Origin: Mizuhopecten yessoensis
Lineage: Eukaryota
Length of the DNA stretch: 64,000 nt
Reading direction: 5' to 3'
Assembly: GCF_002113885.1 (NCBI RefSeq)
Contig: NW_018405922.1
Span: forward strand, 218,477 to 282,476
Shown: piece by piece, positions 47,870-63,605 of the stretch
Layout: every line of letters begins with the position of its first letter
Position numbering within the stretch: position 1 is the stretch's first letter
The notes under the pieces: generated by a model
The model's input: only the letters and a program-made list of their open reading frames with translations
Database searches by the model: none
Told to the model about the DNA's origin: nothing
Made by a program: the position numbers and the translations under genes

Positions 47870-47873
47870 ATGG
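47870..47873 (+). CDS. Exon 1 coding part (ATG G) of the LU-IgGFc gene
   Basis: ctcATGG|gttagt donor; phase 1 joins the signal-peptide exon to give MGAYTIF... Confidence 0.5.
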
Positions 47874-48252
47874 GTTAGTATGCTTTATAATATCATCATA
47901 TTTAACGTATGTTAAGTGTTTTAAGAGTTTTATCATCAAAGATTTACTACTTACTTATGCTCTACATATCTAACCATATTGTGTTCACTTATCGTTTAAT
48001 ATATATCAATCAATAATGACTCGTTTTTTCAATGAACGTAAATATACCGATCCGTGTTTACAATTATGATGTGAGTTCGAATATTCAGTCTTAATCATCA
48101 AAACTCCGTAAGTCGTGCACCAGAATGTGCCCTTACGAGTATGTCAAACTTTAATTGCTGTTCAGATCTGATAAGCATACACACATCTGATAAAATCTTC
48201 AATGTAAATGTATTGTGATATATGAAGTATATGATAAAATATCATTGTTCAG

Positions 48253-48303
48253 GTGCTTACACTATTTTCGTCACCTTCCTGGTCTTCCTGGTTATAATTC
48301 AAT
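48253..48303 (+). CDS. Exon 2, signal peptide core (GAYTIFVTFLVFLVIIQ)
   Basis: Acceptor cattgttcag, donor |gtaagt, phase 1-1; hydrophobic stretch continues into YITA-LRC. Confidence 0.7.
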
Positions 48304-48506
48304 GTAAGTAGACTTTCCGTTATCATTTCACAATGTTTCACAGTACCATTAATGTCAGATATTTCAAGACCCTTGTGTTTATCGTCCTTTGCTTACTTCA
48401 ATGCGTCTTTTTTGTTGGTCCCCGTTATAAAGCTTGTCGATATCGTCCATCTTACAGTACGTACGTCACACCAGTCATAATGTTTGTACTACATATCAGA
48501 TGTTCA

Positions 48507-49095
48507 CCCCTGCAGGTAAAGGACAGAAAAAAGAATACACCTGCGGTTACCAACTACATGTAGCTTAAGAGGTGACTTATGCGAGGATCCACCTGCATAA
48601 TTGGGGATTGGCTTTTGTGCCCTCCACTAGGGGACACGAATGTGACCAAAATAATCTGCTGCACCATTTGCAATAATTGGGATCTTTATATTTCTTTCAA
48701 CTTTTAATTTCCTAGCGCCTTCCTTGGCAACACTTCATTTTTGGCTTTGATATTGAGCGTTCGCTCAGGTGAGGAAGGCAATTGGTTCTATCCCCAAAAC
48801 CGGGACATACCAAAGTTCGTTAAATGGTAGTTGCTAGTTCTCTGCTTAACGTGCAGCATTTAGTGGAATGGCAACAACTGGTTCACCCGTTTCAGTATAA
48901 CGCGACAGGATGGAATGTTGTGCTGGGTACCTTCGGTATGGTATTTTAGTGAGATGGAACTATAAAGGCGTCATCAGATCCGCGCTATCACACAAGGAGG
49001 CAAAAACACCAACTCATCCTGTCTCCGGCACACTTATACACATGCATGCATACACAACACACAACGAGACATGTCCTTAAATGTCCTTACCTTAA
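48507..49095 (+). mobile_element. Composite SINE family B copy
   Basis: cccctgcaggt leader, B-box-like ggttctatccc (48784), central core, gtccttaaatg tail. Confidence 0.8.
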
Positions 49096-49694
49096 ACATC
49101 TTTGTCCTGACACCTTCTCCTCTTAACTAATAGGACAATTTTAGCGAAACTGGTTCATCTCGGCTAACAAAACTTGGTATGTAAGTATGTTTTCGCATGG
49201 GGAGGGAGTACAGGAAGTATATCAGTGACCTGTATACTTAAATAAGTGTACAGCTCGGTCAACAAAGAAATAATTACTGGTGGGATACTTTGGAATGCTT
49301 TGCAATGCTTTGCATGTGTAAGGCTTTAGCTCAAAGTTCTGTGTTATATAGGAGCGGGGGTATTAGTTAGCATTTGGCTTACAGTTATAGTTTTTTTTTA
49401 TCTTGTGTATCAGTAAAATTTACGTATACATTTTGTATTTATAGTTCCGTGATGTAATACTTTATACCGGGAAATGTTCGCCGCTGTTCAACTTCTGTTT
49501 TTACACCGTAAGTAGGGAAGAATATATAATCGCAGCCAATATAAGTACGCAATATAACGTGTAAAGTAATCGCATAAACGTGATGGGATAAATTAACACG
49601 GGGCTAATTTTGATTTTATCTGTGAAGGACGAAAGTTTCCAGGTATACATTATGTAGACGCGACTGTTCCTACACAGCGATCGGATTAGTTAGG

Positions 49695-50125
49695 GTCGAT
49701 TTGGTTAAGCGTCCCATAAACAGCTCATGTCATCTAAGGACGTGTCGTCATGTAGGTCATATATGCGTGGGTGTTAGAGGCGGTTTATTGGTGTATTTAC
49801 CTTCTTACGATTGCGCGGATCTGTTGCCGCATTTGAGTGCAACCTTGCTTAATTATCAAAACAGTATACATACCGATCACAGTATGCTGGCAAAGGATTT
49901 ACTTGTTGTTGTGCTAAACGTTGATAACTAACGTTTAGAAAGGAATATCATCGAGGGGCTGTGTTCTGCACTTGAACATTACATAAAGCCTTCCCCACTT
50001 AGGCGAACGTTCAACACTGAGGCCAATAGTGCGGCACTGCCAAGCAAGACGGAATGAGTGCAGCACATTTATTTTGGTCGTTAGATGGTTCCCACATAAG
50101 TCGCCTCTTACGATATATGCAGTGA
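49695..50125 (-). mobile_element. Degenerate composite SINE family B copy
   Basis: aagtcgcctcttacga, taggcgaacgttcaac and cgtcccataaacagct are reverse complements of family motifs. Confidence 0.6.
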
Positions 50126-50255
50126 GTAACAGCTGGTCATTCTTTTTTGTATTCTCTGACAATCTGTAGTGTATTGTCCATCGATCAATATTCATTATTA
50201 TAATATTATTTTGTACATTTGCATATGTAAAATCAAATCAAAGGTTCTTTGACAG

Positions 50256-50341
50256 ATATCACCGCCCTACGATGTTTAAGTTGTAATGGTTTCATACAAC
50301 CACATCAGTGTTCTAATATCGAACTCTGCCCTGAAGGAGAC
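50256..50341 (+). CDS. Exon 3, LU-like domain 1a (YITALRCLSCNGFIQPHQCSNIELCPEGD)
   Basis: ttctttgacag acceptor, |gtaagt donor, phase 1-0; LxCxxC start typical of three-finger domains. Confidence 0.85.
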
Positions 50342-50920
50342 GTAAGTAGGCCATTAAATACAGTTATCTTTGTGGGAAAAAACGAGGTTTAATGTCAAAT
50401 ATTAACAAAAAGGTTACGGAGACCACGAAGGGACATATGAATACATTTACTAATCCGTGTGTACGAGTTACCAACCCGTGCGCATGACATTCCAATACAT
50501 GTATACGAATTACTAATCCGTATGCACGAGTTATCTTATCTCTTATCGTGGCTCTGTAATTATAGTTGAGATTTAAATAGTGTGTTCGGTAATATATCAG
50601 AGAAAAGGTCACAAATGGTCATTTTAAAATAGGATTTACGTAGAAAAATCGAATTGTACACGTATAACTGCCTGTAGTTGTTTCCGTGAGTTAGGTCTTT
50701 AAAACAACTTATTCTCTATGACGGTGATATTTATTAACAATTAATCACCCTAGGAGCATTTTGCATAGGGTGTCTTTAATGAAGTAAGGACATCGGATTT
50801 ACGGGGGTCTTGTCCGTAACCTCAATTTAAAAACAAACAAGAAAAATATCTGTATATGAACCAAGTCATATTTAAATCAGTTAAAATTCATAGATGTAAG
50901 AATATGCGTTTTATATCCAG

Positions 50921-50992
50921 GTATGCATAACTGAGTCCTACCGAAGCGAGAATGGTGAAACCATGTTTTACGTTGGGTGTGCGTCTGCAAAG
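50921..50992 (+). CDS. Exon 4, LU-like domain 1b (VCITESYRSENGETMFYVGCASAK)
   Basis: ttttatatccag acceptor, AAG|gtataa donor, phase 0-0. Confidence 0.85.
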
Positions 50993-51242
50993 GTATAAAT
51001 AACCGTAAATATGGTGACTTTTAATAGGATGGTTCATAACCTATCCAAGCGGATGAATCATGTTCTATGAGTAACACATTTAACATCATCAGGTAAATAT
51101 CGCTTCATTAATATGAAACTAAATCACTTTTTGCGCGGTCTTGTTGATTTGTGACAGAACGCCATAAAAAGTACAGCACTTTTCCCCTTAGACCCGCTCA
51201 CTTGTTCAGCAATGCTGAGCGTATCCAGTGGCTGGCTGGATG

Positions 51243-51823
51243 TCCCTGCAGGTGGGGCGTAAGAATTGTACCTGCTGCCCCCATTGCATGATTGTAAAAG
51301 GCGACTTAATTTGTGATCTTATCTTTTCTCTTTATTCTAAACAACTTTCTTCTTCCTAATGTCTTCCTTGACAATGCCTCACTTTTGGCCTTCCATAAAT
51401 GACCATAGCTGTTGGTAGGACGTTAAACAATACTAAATAAAACCGTTAGTTTAGTGTTCGCCCCTTTGAGGAAGGTTTTGGGTTATGTTCCCTGGCTGAA
51501 ACATACCGGAGTCTGTAAAAATGGTAGTTTTTACTCCTGCTTAGCGCTGATCAATTTAGGAGTGAGACGACTGGTTCATCCGTTTTCAGTATAATGTGAC
51601 CGGGTGGGGTGTCCTGCTGGGTGTCTTTGGCAGTATGTTTCAGTGCGGTAGCACTATAAAGTCGGCATCAGTTCCGCGCTATCACAAGGAGACAAACACT
51701 AACATATCGCAGCGTTCCAAAACACACACACATACACTTCACGCATGCATCTTGCACATAAGGGAGGCCGTCCTTAAATGACCATAGCGGTTGATAGGAC
51801 TTTAAACTGAACCAACTAAACCA
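51243..51823 (+). mobile_element. Composite SINE family B copy with a 16-bp target-site duplication
   Basis: TSD agtggctgg(c/a)tggatg at 51227-51242 and 51824-51839. Confidence 0.88.
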
Positions 51824-52113
51824 AGTGGCTGGATGGATGGCCGCCTGTACGTTAGTAATGGATGCAGTGTCGTGACTATGTAGTACCATGTAACTATGTA
51901 AGGCCAGTTCCCGGTGGTTAGGGAAGGTGCATTGGTTTTCCTATCAAATGCCTGTAAAATCCTTTTAATTTAAATCAATTCGATGATGAATTTGAGATCT
52001 TTTGCTTTTTAATATTTTGTAGTTTATATGATGTATTTCATGTTTAATATTAAACGTTTTACTTGAACACTCATATATAAATCATTAAGGTTTTTTTTTA
52101 TTTGTTCATCAAG

Positions 52114-52249
52114 AGATGTGCATTGACCAGCGGTCATAAACGCTTCGCTGACATCCTTCGGACAGATAACATCGGAACTCCTCCGCATCGTATATGTACT
52201 GAGTGCTGCCACAGTGACCTTTGTAATTCTGCGGGTTGTCGAATGGGCG
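52114..52249 (+). CDS. Exon 5, LU-like domain 1c (RCALTSGHKRFADILRTDNIGTPPHRICTECCHSDLCNSAGCRMG)
   Basis: T-rich tract and aag acceptor, G|gttagt donor, phase 0-1; CCxxDLCN motif. Confidence 0.85.
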
Positions 52250-52809
52250 GTTAGTCAAAATTTGGTACAGACATTAGCTAGGGCCCCTTCCACGTATCCG
52301 GTTCAACTGATCTGTCTGTTTTTAAATGTTCCTTTTTCGGGTATAAATCCTGGCGGACCTGCAACTGTTTATTCAGGCCTTGCAAGAACAGCATCTGATT
52401 TCTTGGTCCGAACAATTTTGTTCTTCAACTAACAACTCTTGTCCAACTGGTTCAATCGTTGCATCGCGATAACCGAATGCAGCTTAGGGAGAGCCGTTAT
52501 ATGGGCGAAATTCCATACTGTGATTTTGTCGCTTGGTTATAAATTGTGCATTATGGACATGAAGACCTACATTGTTATAGTCTGGTTTGTAGTACTTAGA
52601 CGATTACTCCTATTGTGGTACAGAAGCTTTATATCAGTGCTAATATTGGTTTGCATTTATCACCTGCGATAAGAAGCGACCGCATCAAATCAGACTTATA
52701 AGAAAATTAAGTTTATATCTACGTTCATGGGACCAAACTCTATTAAACGAACGAACGAAGCGCTTTAATCCTTTTTAATTACGTGTTATATTCGTCCATC
52801 TTTAAATAG

Positions 52810-52904
52810 GATTTCCAACACAAAGAGGACCGGTATGTTTAGATTGTCCACAATCACGTGACCTTGCTGATTGTGATGCCATCTCCATTTGTCAACAAAG
52901 CGAG
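52810..52904 (+). CDS. Exon 6, LU-like domain 2a (GFPTQRGPVCLDCPQSRDLADCDAISICQQSE)
   Basis: tttaaatag acceptor, GAG|gtaagg donor, phase 1-0; same Cys spacing as exon 3. Confidence 0.85.
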
Positions 52905-53160
52905 GTAAGGATATTGATTCCAATCAATTATAGTGGTACAAATAAAACAGGAAAATACGGAAGTGTCATCAAAACTACACTTCCAGTAGAAAATTGATAA
53001 AATATGGTCAAAATATGAACAAAGGAAAGATTAACATTGATACCAATGAAAAGGAAGCAAAAGGAGAAACAAATGAGGTGTTCCAGAAGTGAAAGAGTAT
53101 TATGTAACATATCACATGTTCAATATACAAGAAGTCAAATAACCATGGTCCAATGGGAGA

Positions 53161-53378
53161 GGCCTGCTGGGTGTTTTCGGCAGTATGTTTCAGTGCGGTA
53201 GCACTATAAAGTCGGCATCAGTTCCGCTTTATAACAAGGAGACAAACACTAACATATCGCAGCCTCCCGAAACACACACGCATACACTACTCGCATGCAT
53301 CTTGCACACAGGGAGGCCCTCCTTAAATGACCCTAGTTGTTGATAGGACGTTAAACATTACTGAACCATACCAAACCT
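53161..53378 (+). mobile_element. 5'-truncated SINE family B copy with an 8-bp TSD
   Basis: Near-identical to 51612-51810; atgggaga at 53153 and 53379. Confidence 0.85.
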
Positions 53379-53500
53379 ATGGGAGATCAACCAAAACCAA
53401 ACAGCAGGAAGAACTCCCCGATATAGAGCTGTCAAACCAGTTGTTATTAGTGCAATGGCAACCAATGATATGCCTGTCAATTTTAAATATTTTATTTAAG

Positions 53501-53569
53501 GTATGTTACGTTGAGGAAATGTTTGAGTTCGGCGATATATTCTACAAAACAAGCTGCCTACCGAATACA
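53501..53569 (+). CDS. Exon 7, LU-like domain 2b (VCYVEEMFEFGDIFYKTSCLPNT)
   Basis: tttatttaag acceptor, |gtgagt donor, phase 0-0; parallels exon 4. Confidence 0.85.
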
Positions 53570-53844
53570 GTGAGTGCCATTATATTTACGAAATGGTTGT
53601 TTGTATAGATTACATATATGTCTCCTAAGTGTACTTTACAACATAACTTCAGTTCATAAAGTAATTGTTGTTGATAATGAACAAACAGCTCCAGTTTTTT
53701 TTATTCCTTATTGTACTTTTCAGAGATGATTGCATTCGCGCGTTTGTAAAGCCTCTCGTATCATGTCTAGGTTTTGTTGAAGCAGCATAAACAATAGAGT
53801 AACATTCTTTAAGGTTTGTTCTTTACTGTTTGATGAAGGACCAG

Positions 53845-53947
53845 CGATGTGTTCCTCCTACATATAACCCGGTGGAGGTTGGCAAGCGGTCACATCAACT
53901 TGGAACCTGCTTCTCCTGCTGCCCATATGACCTCTGTAACAGCAAAT
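53845..53947 (+). CDS. Exon 8, LU-like domain 2c (RCVPPTYNPVEVGKRSHQLGTCFSCCPYDLCNSK)
   Basis: CCxxDLCN motif, phase 0-1. Acceptor either cag 53844 or aag 53838 (both in frame); donor gtaaaa is weak. Confidence 0.75.
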
Positions 53948-54417
53948 GTAAAATGATAATTGCTTTTTAATGACAATATTATTAATGTAGCTACCCATAT
54001 ATGTTAAACAAACAAACATCAGATTCATTGTTCAAACATATTCTAATTATCAATATCAATCAAAGGAAATTGGTTCAAGTTCTTACATTTTATTATCCTC
54101 TCAAACACATTGAATACGGTTCGACAAAATGGGAAATTTATCATAAGTTTTATTCCATTTGTAGTAGTGATTCCATCAAGTAAATATCAGTGACATCATT
54201 CTCACTTCATCCTTGTTCAAATTATCGGTTGATATATATTTAGAAAATTACTTACTAAGATATCGGTAAAAATCCCAGGAATTAAGCATGGTCGGTGTCC
54301 TTTATATAATTTTTGTTTTCTTCAGTTAATGCGAAGCCAAAATAAGAAATAATATCATATCTATATATTTATATTAATTCGACCAGAGTCGTATCTTTAA
54401 CATTTACATTTTACCAG

Positions 54418-54498
54418 GTAATTCTTTCTCATCGTCCGTGCTAACAACGATACCGGCAACAACTCCGACTCCAAAAACCCAGGCTCCCATAACTAACA
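54418..54498 (+). CDS. Exon 9, Ser/Thr/Pro linker (CNSFSSSVLTTIPATTPTPKTQAPITN)
   Basis: catttacattttaccag acceptor, A|gtaaat donor, phase 1-1; mucin-like composition. Confidence 0.75.
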
Positions 54499-55070
54499 GT
54501 AAATATACAAATAAATGTATTTGTTTCATGAATAATTCCACATTTTTGATTCTCATATTATCTATTTGCTGAAGAAAAAAGGTTCAATAGAGTAAACGTT
54601 TATATATGAATATATATATCATTAACCAATATATGGTTTAAAGTGTCTTGTTTAAAATAAGAGAATGGCAATCGAATGTATGAAAAGTCGTCTCAATATT
54701 GTCTAATATTTCAAAGAGTGGCATTCTTTCAGTCTTTTCCTTTCTATTTTTTCGCTCTTCGAACTCGCATCCGCAAAGAAGCCTTCATCTATGAATAATG
54801 AAAATAATGTGTTTGCAATGATGATTTCAAAAGCAGTTTTGGAGAATATGTTTGAATCCAACTTGATGTCAAATATAATTACTGTTGTCTTCCAAAAATG
54901 CTTCTTCTAATTAAGTAAAATGTGAAATTTTTGTAACATAAGGATGTAAGATCGTCAATGTCTGCTTTATATCATTTCTATCATACTTTGTAATTTGTTT
55001 GACATTCATAAACTAGTTTTCGACATACACTCTGTCATGAAATACATCCTTTTGTATTTTTTTTTGACAG

Positions 55071-56314
55071 GTTTCAAAGGAAAATCGTTTTTCTTGATGT
55101 TCATTAGAAATCATGAATATGTCTACATTGCACAACACCTAAGTGTAAACGTAACATTCTTAGCTACTCATGCTAATATAGAAGTGATCACACGATATAA
55201 CGCAACATCACAACCTGTTTCTGGTCCAGCAAAATATATTGAAATAGACGCAAACATGACCATGCGAGAAAACGGCAAAACAAGCAAAGGGCTCATTCTG
55301 ACGTCTGACACACTAATGTCTGTCACTGCATTTAACAGTCTTGCAGGTGGAACAGCGGATGGATACCTTGCCTTACCTATGGAGAGTCTTGGTGTCTTCT
55401 ATATCGTGGGGACATTCAGACCTAATACAAAGAGTTATAGCATCTATGGAACTTCATTTGCTGTAGGAGCGCCGTACGACAACACATTGATCAATATCAC
55501 ACTCAGTACATCAGGTGTGACTGTTCCTGGCCAATATCACAAGGTGGGAGATAAAATCACCGTCATACTGGACAAATTGGACACGTTCTATATAGAAACA
55601 ACAACGAGTTACCAGGACCTGACAGGCACGCGTATCGTTAGCGATAAGCCAGTAGCGGTCGTGTCCGGTAATGTCTGTTCTAACAGAGAAGGGTGTAACC
55701 ATCTCATTGAGTATCTACCTCCCGTGTCAAAATGGGGTTCCAGGTTCATTGTACCACCTTTTATGAGAAGTACCAGTGGTATTATCAGGATTGTCTCGTC
55801 GGTAAACAATACGAGTGTTGTTGTCGCTTCTAAAACCTCGATTAAAACATATACTATATCAACCTTCATTAATATAGATACAGATCCAACTCAACCGTAC
55901 CGCATTTCTAGTGAAAGACCTGTTCTTGTCCTACTATTTTTGAATGTAATCAAAGTTGGAATGTCAATTATTCCGTCAATAAACCAGTTTTCCAATGAAC
56001 CCGTGCTGGTTTCGCCTCCTCAAGTTTCCTACTTCCAAAACACTCCATTCGAAAACTTTATCGTTGTCAGTATCCGGACAAGCGACCAGTCCGGCTTACA
56101 GCTTCTCTCCACTAAAGGGACGGACTTGACTCGCATTGGATCAGTGACATTTCCTGGCATTGACGGCGAGATGTTTAGCTTCATATCTGTCAACTGCAAC
56201 AACAAACAAACATGTTCTGTTCAACATAGCGACAACAACGTGGTGTTCAGTGTTATAACATATGGGTTTACAAGGGCTGAAACGTATGCATATCCTGCAA
56301 ATCTCAGTTTGTAA
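55071..56314 (+). CDS. Exon 10, IgGFc-binding protein N-terminal-type domain
   Basis: GKSFFLMF, KGLILTSD, DGYLALPMESLG, DLTGTRIVSDKPVAVVSGN, HLIEYLPPVSKWG and YGFTRAETYAYPA match the FCGBP N-terminal (IgGFc_binding) family pattern; strong acceptor ttttttttgacag. Confidence 0.92.
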
Positions 56315-62895: not shown

Positions 62896-63605
62896 TAAAC
62901 CCTTCTATCTAAGGTGGTGTTTTATCATATTTAATTTAATAATACATTATATAAGATGTTTTTTAGATTTGTAATGACAAGTGTTAAAATTTAAATTATT
63001 TAAATACTAATCATATATATAGATATAAATATATATATTCAGTATTAGATATATCCATTTTGTAGTCCTTGTGCTGCTGATATGATAAGATGAATATTAT
63101 ATTAATATAAATAGTTATTAAATAATCTTTATTATTGTAACATTTAATAAGATGCCTACATTACCTTGTACAAAATGGAAGAATGTAATGTGTGACTAAG
63201 AGTGTGGTGTTTAACAGTTAATTAATCAAAATTCCTAGATGTTATTAGTATCTTATAACTATCATTACGTGATAAGATGTTCGTCGATGGTATGTTGTAC
63301 ACGGGCGAGACGAGTTCTTAAAGGATGGAATCACGTGTTCAGCCTGCTCACCCATGAATGTAGAGGAAAGCAGGTCGAAGAGATCGCGCCAGCCGTCAAC
63401 TCCAAACGGAACAGGATCATCAACTTCCGGTTGTCCACCGTCACGTCGGGCTAGATACGCTGTTGGCCAGGATAGGCAAGGTTCTCATGCGGGTTGTGAT
63501 GAGGAACAGACCTACGCCAAAGCTGTTTCCGCATAGGGCTCTATATACGAGAGTGTTAAGTCATGTGCAAAGCTTCATGGTAAATTATCTCCTATGTACG
63601 ACTTA

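What the first reader, a model, noticed from the sequence alone, without database searches (positions are those of the whole stretch)
47870..56314. Hidden 10-exon gene: tandem 12-Cys three-finger-like domains fused to an IgGFc-binding N-terminal domain
Seen: nine small exons upstream of the single long ORF splice in frame into a 646-aa protein with a signal peptide, two Cys-rich domains, a Thr/Pro stalk and an FCGBP-N-type domain. It has no transmembrane segment, GPI-type tail or VWD domain. Known: LU (Ly6/uPAR) domains are usually stand-alone or GPI-anchored, and vertebrate FCGBP-N precedes VWD-C8-TIL arrays. Inference: an exon-shuffled, secreted mucosal, immune or extracellular-matrix protein with an uncharacterised architecture. 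I cannot tell whether homologues are already annotated as uncharacterised proteins.
Basis: partly seen in the sequence, partly recalled or inferred. Interest (0 to 1): 0.8.

Follow-up and report, generated by a model that had tools for sequence, protein, structure and literature searches.

The report
Scallop secreted LU-LU-FCGBP-N gene
This is a real, transcribed 10-exon scallop gene for a secreted protein with two three-finger (Ly6/uPAR) domains and an "IgGFc-binding N-terminal" domain; public annotation breaks it at this locus, but it belongs to a large bivalve family that joins the same three-finger pair to many recognition domains.

Summary
The window is Mizuhopecten yessoensis scaffold NEDP02002595.1. 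Spliced cDNA contigs from three runs show all seven junctions from 50341>50921 to 54498>55071, and one 2066-nt contig is long enough to span the CDS. The last exon is a full-length PF17517 (IgGFc_binding) match. The two 12-Cys domains are Ly6/uPAR three-finger domains by Pfam, by PDB profile hits (SLURP-1, PSCA, GPIHBP1) and by an AlphaFold model (pLDDT 87; Z 9.9 to GPIHBP1, 8.6 to the TGF-beta receptor II ectodomain).

Both public models at this locus are faulty: one truncated, one a chimera with a downstream tandem paralogue. Intact models with the same architecture already exist as "IgGFc-binding protein-like" or "uncharacterized" in Pecten, Ylistrum, Mytilus, Ostrea, Crassostrea and Tegillarca.

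The LU pair is a bivalve-wide module: 447 cluster representatives, with every named protein sampled being from a bivalve. It is joined to fibrinogen-related, C-type lectin, C1q, EGF, TSP1, Ig or FCGBP-N domains.

The likely role is a secreted recognition or bridging protein; this is inferred, not shown. Other first-stage notes in this scan flag LU fusions elsewhere in the same genome. Interest is moderate.

The parts
47870..47873 (+). Coding end of exon 1: start codon plus one base (ATGG), donor gttagt. The 5' UTR lies upstream and its extent is not determined.
   Evidence: Database model P0018 starts its CDS here (L001 coordinate = window - 37869). Paralogue P0004's locus has the same ATGG|gtcagtatgct junction. 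Homologues begin MG... Not covered by the laid reads.
48253..48303 (+). Exon 2: hydrophobic signal-peptide core. An alternative in-frame ATG at 48222 would apply if intron 1 is retained.
   Evidence: tblastn of P0018 residues 2-18 is 100% identical. A hydrophobic window lies at the N-terminus.
50256..50341 (+). Exon 3: start of LU domain 1 (LRCLSC... motif), entered in phase 1.
   Evidence: Junction 50341>50921 seen in X1, X4 and X5. Phases.
50921..50992 (+). Exon 4: middle of LU domain 1.
   Evidence: Junctions on both sides in cDNA contigs.
52114..52249 (+). Exon 5: end of LU domain 1 (CCHSDLCN...C), leaves in phase 1.
   Evidence: Junctions. UPAR_LY6 hit of 38 bits on P0018 residues 22-111, which are identical to these exons.
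52810..52904 (+). Exon 6: start of LU domain 2.
   Evidence: Junctions.
53501..53569 (+). Exon 7: middle of LU domain 2.
   Evidence: Junctions.
53839..53947 (+). Exon 8: end of LU domain 2 (conserved G-K/R-R loop, CCPYDLCN), leaves in phase 1.
   Evidence: Junctions. The family profile hits SLURP-1 and PSCA over this domain. The model matches the TGF-beta RII ectodomain at Z 8.6.
54418..54498 (+). Exon 9: 81-nt phase 1-1 exon that completes the last Cys of LU domain 2 and encodes a short Ser/Thr/Pro linker.
   Evidence: Junctions 53947>54418 and 54498>55071 in X1, X4 and X5. Composition.
55071..56314 (+). Exon 10: FCGBP-N (PF17517) all-beta domain, with the stop codon at 56312-56314.
   Evidence: Pfam E 1.9e-42, 146 bits, profile positions 1-297 of 297. 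AF2 pLDDT 87.9, pTM 0.91. cDNA contigs are contiguous across the exon as far as the laid stretch reaches (56199), and the coordinates of the X4 contig imply it runs on to about 56340, past the stop. Homologues end with the same YAYPANLxL tail.
48890..48992 (.). SINE-like repeat copy in intron 2. It is not part of the gene product.
   Evidence: Repeat family D1.
51584..51763 (.). SINE-like repeat copy in intron 4.
   Evidence: Families D1 and D2. Very high depth from elsewhere in the RNA runs, with many mismatches.
53134..53313 (.). SINE-like repeat copy in intron 6.
   Evidence: Families D1 and D2. Repeat-derived depth.

Best explanation
An intact, transcribed Mizuhopecten yessoensis gene encodes a secreted, unanchored modular glycoprotein. 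Its order is signal peptide, two 12-Cys Ly6/uPAR three-finger domains, a short Ser/Thr/Pro linker, and a C-terminal all-beta FCGBP-N (PF17517) domain.

It belongs to a bivalve-wide family. In that family a conserved tandem LU module, usually N-terminal, has been joined by exon shuffling to many different extracellular recognition or adhesion domains.

Inferred mechanism: a soluble bridging or recognition factor. The C-terminal domain sits in the slot that fibrinogen-related, C-type lectin, C1q or SUEL-lectin domains occupy in sister proteins, so it would bind a target such as a glycan, a microbial surface or a mucus polymer. The LU pair would supply a common protein-protein function, such as docking to a host cell-surface partner or self-association.

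Shown here: the gene structure, its transcription, the domain identities and folds, and the family's distribution. Inferred only: secretion, the binding roles and the immune or mucosal context.
For: Gene and transcript: canonical splice sites, an open frame, and seven junctions in spliced contigs from three runs.

Domains: PF17517 at 146 bits. UPAR_LY6 at 38 bits on P0018, which is identical to exons 2-6. PDB-profile hits to SLURP-1, PSCA, LYPD1, LYPD6 and GPIHBP1. The AF2 LU model has pLDDT 86.9 and three-finger matches for both domains.

No TM segment or GPI-like tail.

Family: the LU-pair profile finds 447 cluster representatives at E<=1e-3. Among the top 111, the partner domains are Fibrinogen_C 20, Lectin_C 13, EGF 10, IgGFc_binding 9, MIB_HERC2 6, Ig 4, TSP1 4, C1q 2 and SUEL 1.

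Shuffling: all modules are bounded by phase-1 introns. Pectinid FCGBP-N and CTLD proteins share one LU clade (SH-aLRT 99), and the FCGBP-N label needs at least 5 changes on well-supported branches. Heterodont clams carry the two domain types in reverse order.
Against: There are no binding, localisation or tissue data. The runs that hold the transcript are coded, so the tissue is unknown, and one polyA run (X20) shows no expression.

The function of PF17517 is unknown even in human FCGBP, and its IgG binding was not reproducible (PMC8267560, PMC11796319). It has no solved relative by sequence and only weak sub-domain fold matches.

LU domains elsewhere act as receptor modulators or toxins, so the LU pair could be the effector rather than an adaptor.

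Signal-peptide and GPI predictions were not run with dedicated tools. The two 5'-most junctions lack direct read support.
Confidence: 0.55

Rival explanations
1. A structural mucus or extracellular-matrix component, analogous to FCGBP in mucus, rather than a recognition factor. The Thr/Pro stalk would be O-glycosylated and the protein would be built into secreted gels, byssus or adhesive, or shell matrix.
For: Oyster relatives with long stalks are named mucin-like (P0048). Paralogues P0004 and P0005 have longer Ser/Thr/Pro stalks and a ShK-like domain. "IgGFc-binding protein" appears in bivalve settlement and shell proteome papers, although those proteins may be the VWD type.
Against: This gene's linker is only about 25 residues. 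It has no VWD, C8, TIL or CTCK polymerising domains. Its sister proteins carry lectin-type heads.
Confidence: 0.2
2. The LU pair is the active part. It would be a secreted Lynx/SLURP-like or receptor-ectodomain-like ligand or decoy that modulates a receptor such as a nicotinic receptor or a TGF-beta-family ligand. The FCGBP-N domain would be a carrier or localiser.
For: Profile hits to SLURP-1, PSCA and LYPD1. Domain 2's best fold match is the TGF-beta RII ectodomain at Z 8.6. A G-K/R-R motif is conserved in a flexible finger loop.
Against: The same LU pair is attached to more than ten unrelated extracellular domains, which fits a generic adaptor better than a specific ligand. Fold similarity does not show function.
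Confidence: 0.15
3. A non-functional or decaying duplicate in a tandem pair, transcribed but not making a useful protein.
For: The downstream tandem paralogue carries an in-frame stop in its last exon in this assembly. Both copies are mis-modelled in public annotation.
Against: This copy has an intact 648-codon frame. All 24 LU cysteines and the conserved FCGBP-N motifs are kept. It is correctly spliced in three runs.
Confidence: 0.05

Closest known systems
Pecten maximus and M. yessoensis "IgGFc-binding protein-like" RefSeq models (P0010 649 aa, P0005 715 aa, P0004 719 aa) and Ylistrum balloti LOC132552935 (P0006)
   Same: The same order of signal peptide, LU, LU, stalk and FCGBP-N. 56-64% identity over the last exon and 56-61% over the LU pair, with matching exon boundaries.
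   Different: They are automatic predictions only, with no experimental study found. P0004 and P0005 carry an extra ShK-like domain and a longer stalk. No intact model was found for this locus: the only 100%-identical hit is the 432-aa P0001, and the locus holds only P0001 and the chimeric P0018.
Mollusc LU fusion proteins (LU+C1q, LU+FReD, LU+Ig, LU+MAM) described in PMC13719153 (Acta Naturae 2026)
   Same: Secreted mollusc proteins that join three-finger LU domains to recognition domains. My family scan recovers Fibrinogen_C, C1q and Ig partners.
   Different: That paper's text does not mention FCGBP-N or C-type lectin partners. It also does not describe the conserved 12+12-Cys tandem as one module spread across bivalves.
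Human FCGBP (N1 domain followed by VWD-C8-TIL arrays)
   Same: It shares the PF17517 N-terminal domain.
   Different: The scallop protein has no VWD, C8 or TIL, and PF17517 is C-terminal here. The database name is misleading: the human N-terminal construct did not bind IgG, and mouse FCGBP lacks the domain (PMC8267560, PMC11796319).
Multi-LU vertebrate proteins (uPAR, C4.4A, TEX101, CD177) and single-LU GPIHBP1, CD59 and SLURP-1
   Same: The three-finger fold, the C-terminal CCxxxxCN motif and tandem LU arrangement.
   Different: Those proteins are GPI-anchored or stand-alone. This one is unanchored, has 12 rather than 8-10 Cys per domain, and is fused to a large non-LU domain.
Collectins, ficolins and C1q (a common N-terminal stalk plus a variable recognition head)
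   Same: Only the logic: a shared N-terminal module combined with lectin-type heads (FReD, CTLD, C1q).
   Different: There is no collagen or coiled-coil region. Whether the LU pair oligomerises or docks to a receptor is unknown. This is an analogy, not homology.

Membership tests
Ly6/uPAR (LU) three-finger domain | A match to the family profile above the curated threshold | tested here: met
   UPAR_LY6 scores 38 bits (cut-off 24.8) over profile positions 2-82 on P0018 residues 22-111, which are identical to window exons 3-5. Domain 2 alone is sub-threshold in Pfam (Toxin_TOLIP 18.8 against 21.2). However, the family profile hits SLURP-1 (3.9e-5) and PSCA (5.9e-5) over domain 2.
Ly6/uPAR (LU) three-finger domain | Cysteine framework with an N-terminal LxCxxC and a C-terminal CCxxxxCN | tested here: met
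   Both domains show it (exon translations). All 24 Cys are invariant in 10 pectinid proteins. There are 12 Cys per domain, one pair more than the usual 10.
Ly6/uPAR (LU) three-finger domain | Three-finger beta fold | tested here: met
   AF2 model of P0018:21-210 with a 115-row alignment, pLDDT 86.9. Domain 1 matches GPIHBP1 at Z 9.9, rmsd 2.5 A, 74 residues. Domain 2 matches the TGF-beta RII ectodomain at Z 8.6, 80 residues. It is a predicted model of a proxy whose second domain is about 90% identical to this gene.
IgGFc_binding / FCGBP-N domain (PF17517) | A full-length profile match above threshold | tested here: met
   E 1.9e-42, 146 bits against a cut-off of 25.6, profile positions 1-297 of 297, residues 96-398 of the last exon.
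IgGFc_binding / FCGBP-N domain (PF17517) | Binding of IgG Fc, as the name implies | not testable with these tools
   The name is historical. The human N-terminal construct did not bind IgG (PMC8267560). From general knowledge, scallops have no IgG.
FCGBP / gel-forming mucin-like proteins | Repeated VWD-C8-TIL assemblies | tested here: not met
   There is no VWD, C8 or TIL hit in the last exon or in any full-length homologue. It is therefore not an FCGBP orthologue despite the database name.
Bivalve tandem-LU fusion family (defined here) | A 12+12-Cys LU pair matching profile A1 end to end, joined to another extracellular domain | tested here: met
   P0018 scores 317 bits over profile positions 1-190. 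115 proteins match end to end: the pair is N-terminal in 97, C-terminal in 14 and elsewhere in 4.

The most novel reading that the evidence does not exclude
The 12+12-Cys LU pair is a bivalve-specific universal adaptor. It would couple many unrelated soluble recognition heads (FReD, C-type lectin, C1q, SUEL lectin, FCGBP-N) to one common receptor or oligomeric scaffold. That would make it functionally equivalent to the collagen stalk of collectins, ficolins and C1q, and an unrecognised organising principle of bivalve humoral immunity. FCGBP-N would then be a new class of recognition head.
Probability: 0.2. Interest if true: 0.7.

Novelty: new variant of a known kind. Interest (0 to 1): 0.42.

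Why it matters
It corrects a locus that public annotation splits into a truncated model and a chimera with the neighbouring paralogue.

It shows that the LU-LU-FCGBP-N architecture is real at the RNA level and conserved across pteriomorph bivalves, and that the two domain types occur in reverse order in heterodont clams.

It places the gene in a family of several hundred clusters in which one tandem LU module is recombined with classical invertebrate pattern-recognition domains. That gives two testable handles. One is on the unknown function of PF17517, whose "IgG Fc binding" name is not supported. The other is on what LU domains do in molluscs.

The general idea of mollusc LU fusions was published in 2026, and intact homologue models are already in RefSeq, so this is an extension rather than a discovery of a new kind.

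Tried and rejected
- Foldseek of the FCGBP-N model against PDB gave only meaningless multi-Ig or macroglobulin alignments (TM <= 0.18).
- VIA-align wide gave only sub-domain matches: TM1070 at Z 10 for residues 1-105, and MG or cupin-like sandwiches at Z 6-7. A sequence profile against PDB found nothing at E <= 1. No functional analogue could be named.
- The raw polyA run X20 covered only the intronic SINEs and no exon, so I obtained no strand, level or transcript ends.
- A paper search for LOC110450349 found nothing. The searches for scallop IgGFc-binding protein and for Ly6/uPAR with FREP returned only generic transcriptome or unrelated papers.
- I first modelled the start at ATG 48222 (657 aa).
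- I joined it only inside local scripts, to check the frame and compute composition.
- Searches used the last exon by reference and database proteins as proxies. P0018 is identical over exons 2-6 and about 90% identical over exons 7-8.
- A pseudogene or artefact reading is rejected because of the intact frame and the spliced transcripts.


Full report
**Source and context.** The last exon is 100% identical to a GenBank protein of Mizuhopecten yessoensis (P0001). The window overlaps scaffold NEDP02002595.1 base for base (26,131 of 26,131 positions; L001 coordinate = window - 37869). An ETS-family gene lies upstream. A tandem paralogue lies about 21.7 kb downstream, beyond the window's end.

**Checking the observation: the exon model.** Reading the sequence and testing boundaries in a script gives these coding exons: 48253-48303, 50256-50341, 50921-50992, 52114-52249, 52810-52904, 53501-53569, 53839-53947, 54418-54498 and 55071-56314. 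All have AG acceptors, GT donors and compatible phases, and there is no internal stop.

**The 5' end.** It has two possible readings.
- An in-frame ATG at 48222 gives 657 aa.

- The database model P0018 starts its CDS exactly at window 47870.
- Pectinid homologues begin with MG.
- The 61%-identical paralogue P0004 has the same ATGG|gtcagtatgct junction at its start.

**RNA evidence.**
- Contigs of three runs (X1, X4, X5; two studies) show all seven junctions with GT..AG ends at exactly the predicted positions, including 54498>55071.
- A single 2066-nt X4 contig carries the junctions. By its coordinates it extends about 148 nt upstream of 50256 and to about 56340, so it can span the 1947-nt CDS.
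- These runs are labelled RNA only by a guess. However, precise intron removal shows the contigs are cDNA-derived.
- Their share of sampled words, 0.24-0.32, also matches the exonic fraction of the stretch.
- A raw polyA run (X20) covered only intronic SINE copies, so expression is not ubiquitous.

**Public annotation at this locus.**
- P0001 (432 aa) is the long ORF from an internal Met plus a 3' tail spliced from a donor at about 56284. The only window match to that tail is 80% identical, at 63314-63451. Homologue C-termini and the contiguous cDNA contig argue for the stop at 56312-56314 instead.
- P0018 (275 aa, LOC110450349) spans 29 kb. It joins exons 1-6 of this gene to the later exons of the downstream paralogue.
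- That paralogue has an in-frame stop in its last exon in this assembly, and P0003 is the remainder of it.
- The intact model of this locus was not found in the searched protein collection, so in that sense the gene is hidden.

**Domains: FCGBP-N.**
- The last exon matches PF17517 (IgGFc_binding) end to end (146 bits). There is no VWD, C8 or TIL in it or in any full-length homologue.
- An AlphaFold model of the exon with 15 aligned sequences has pLDDT 87.9 and pTM 0.91. It is all-beta and made of several sandwich-like sub-domains.
- It has no solved relative by sequence and only sub-domain fold matches.
- The literature says the N1 domain's role in human FCGBP is unknown, that it is absent from mouse FCGBP and occurs in gliding bacteria, and that an N-terminal construct did not bind IgG (PMC11796319, PMC8267560). 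The name says nothing about function here.

**Domains: the LU pair.**
- The spliced protein may not be submitted to search tools. I therefore used P0018, which is identical over exons 2-6 and about 90% identical over exons 7-8, together with homologues.
- UPAR_LY6 scores 38 bits on domain 1.
- A 115-sequence family profile hits SLURP-1 and PSCA over domain 2, and LYPD1, LYPD6 and GPIHBP1 over domain 1.
- The AF2 model (pLDDT 86.9) returns only LU or three-finger proteins in Foldseek's top 50.
- VIA-align gives Z 9.9 to GPIHBP1 for residues 1-97, and Z 8.2-8.6 to the TGF-beta RII ectodomain for residues 100-190.
- Each domain has 12 Cys, all invariant among pectinids. The second refutation criterion, not a three-finger fold, is therefore not met.

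**Other features.** A hydropathy scan shows one N-terminal hydrophobic segment and no C-terminal hydrophobic tail. One internal hydrophobic window lies in a confidently modelled beta strand of FCGBP-N. There are 7 N-glycosylation sequons and a linker rich in Ser, Thr and Pro.

**Relatives with the same architecture.** A word search with the last exon finds intact models named "IgGFc-binding protein-like" or "uncharacterized" in Pecten maximus (649 and 715 aa, both flagged PF00021+PF17517), Ylistrum balloti (640 aa) and a second M. yessoensis locus (719 aa).

**Relatives of the LU pair.**
- Searching with the LU pair alone finds pectinid proteins in which the same pair (55-57% identity) precedes a C-type lectin domain instead.
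- A profile of the LU pair against 1.84 billion representatives gives 447 hits at E<=1e-3 and 264 at E<=1e-10.
- All 28 sampled clusters that carry a name, taken from the top to the bottom of the list, are from bivalves: Pectinidae, Mytilidae, Ostreidae, Arcidae, Veneridae, Mactridae and Dreissenidae.
- Pfam on the top 111 shows these partner domains: Fibrinogen_C 20, Lectin_C 13, EGF 10, IgGFc_binding 9, MIB_HERC2 6, Ig 4, TSP1 4, C1q 2, SUEL lectin 1 and CUB/Sushi 1.
- The pair is N-terminal in 97 of 115 end-to-end matches and C-terminal in 14.
- LU pair followed by FCGBP-N also occurs in Mytilus, Ostrea, Crassostrea virginica and Tegillarca. In Ruditapes and Mercenaria the FCGBP-N domain comes first and the LU pair last.

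**Exon shuffling.**
- Each LU domain is three exons entered and left in phase 1. The linker exon is 81 nt and phase 1-1, and the FCGBP-N exon is entered in phase 1. This is the classic arrangement for shuffled extracellular modules.
- In a maximum-likelihood tree of the LU pair, the pectinid FCGBP-N and C-type-lectin proteins fall intermingled in one clade (SH-aLRT 99).
- The FCGBP-N label needs at least five changes on well-supported branches. C-terminal domains have therefore been exchanged repeatedly, including recently within scallops.
- The alignment is short and many deep nodes are unresolved, so the exact number of events is uncertain.

**How it most likely works.**
- Shown: a spliced mRNA and a modular ORF with two three-finger domains and an FCGBP-N domain.
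- Inferred: secretion without an anchor.
- Inferred from family context: FCGBP-N sits where sister proteins carry lectin-type recognition heads, so it probably binds an extracellular target. The conserved LU pair then provides a shared protein-protein function, either receptor docking or self-association.
- I put about 0.55 on this secreted recognition or bridging reading. The rivals are a structural mucus or matrix role, an LU-driven ligand or decoy role, and a decaying duplicate.

**Comparison with the literature, and novelty.** A 2026 survey (PMC13719153) reports mollusc LU+C1q, LU+FReD, LU+Ig and LU+MAM proteins as new architectures. Its text mentions neither FCGBP-N nor C-type lectin partners. 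Two other first-stage notes in this scan flag LU fusions elsewhere in the same genome, one LU-LU-TSP1-FReD and one CUB-LU, which fits the family picture. The finding is therefore a new variant of a recently described kind and a needed correction of this locus. It is not a categorically new system.

**Limits.**
- Tissue, protein-level evidence and binding partners are unknown.
- The first two introns lack direct read support.
- SignalP and GPI predictors were not available.
- The LU model is of a proxy protein.
- Taxonomy was sampled (31 of 447 clusters), not exhaustive.

Noticed in passing
L001:32071-40067 (window-equivalent about 69940-77940, beyond the window's end): A tandem paralogue with the same exon structure lies 21.7 kb downstream. 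In this assembly its last exon has an in-frame stop after ...ITRYNAT (L001 38979-38981). The public models P0018 (front part) and P0003 (rest) are pieces of it.
   Followed up: partly
window 47870-56314 and 63314-63451: Both public models of this locus are faulty. P0001 starts at an internal Met and splices from about 56284 to a 3' tail, whose only window match is 80% identical at 63314-63451. P0018 is a chimera of this gene's exons 1-6 with the paralogue's later exons.
   Followed up: yes
window 48890-48992, 51584-51763, 53134-53313: Three copies of a SINE-like element lie in introns 2, 4 and 6 (61-90% alike). They attract very deep, mismatched coverage from RNA runs, including the polyA run that shows no exon coverage.
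   Followed up: partly
L002:22973-26630 (paralogue P0004 locus): Paralogues P0004 and P0005 have four extra exons between the LU pair and FCGBP-N. These encode a ShK-like 6-Cys domain (Pfam ShK E 0.012, sub-threshold) and a longer Ser/Thr/Pro stalk, so the stalk is the variable part of the subfamily.
   Followed up: partly
P0089, P0111, P0130, P0138, P0146 (Ruditapes and Mercenaria proteins): In heterodont clams the two domain types occur in reverse order, FCGBP-N first and the LU pair last. One of these proteins is 1282 aa and is named CUB and sushi domain-containing.
   Followed up: partly
window 53839-53947 (LU domain 2, third finger): A G-K/R-R motif is invariant in pectinids and is the majority residue across the 115-sequence family. 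It sits in a loop of low model confidence (pLDDT about 56). The KR in domain 1 that another first-stage note pointed to is not conserved. It could be a convertase site or a contact loop.
   Followed up: partly
window 55071-56314 (alignment A2): A few FCGBP-N positions are invariant or nearly so from bacteria to scallop: the DLTG motif, a Gly 14 residues on, a Glu in the NHLxEYLPP segment, and a Tyr near the C-terminus. This hints at a conserved functional site in a domain of unknown function.
   Followed up: no
window about 37870-39341 (L001:1-1472): The 3' part of an ETS-domain gene lies upstream on the + strand. Other first-stage notes concern its intron.
   Followed up: no
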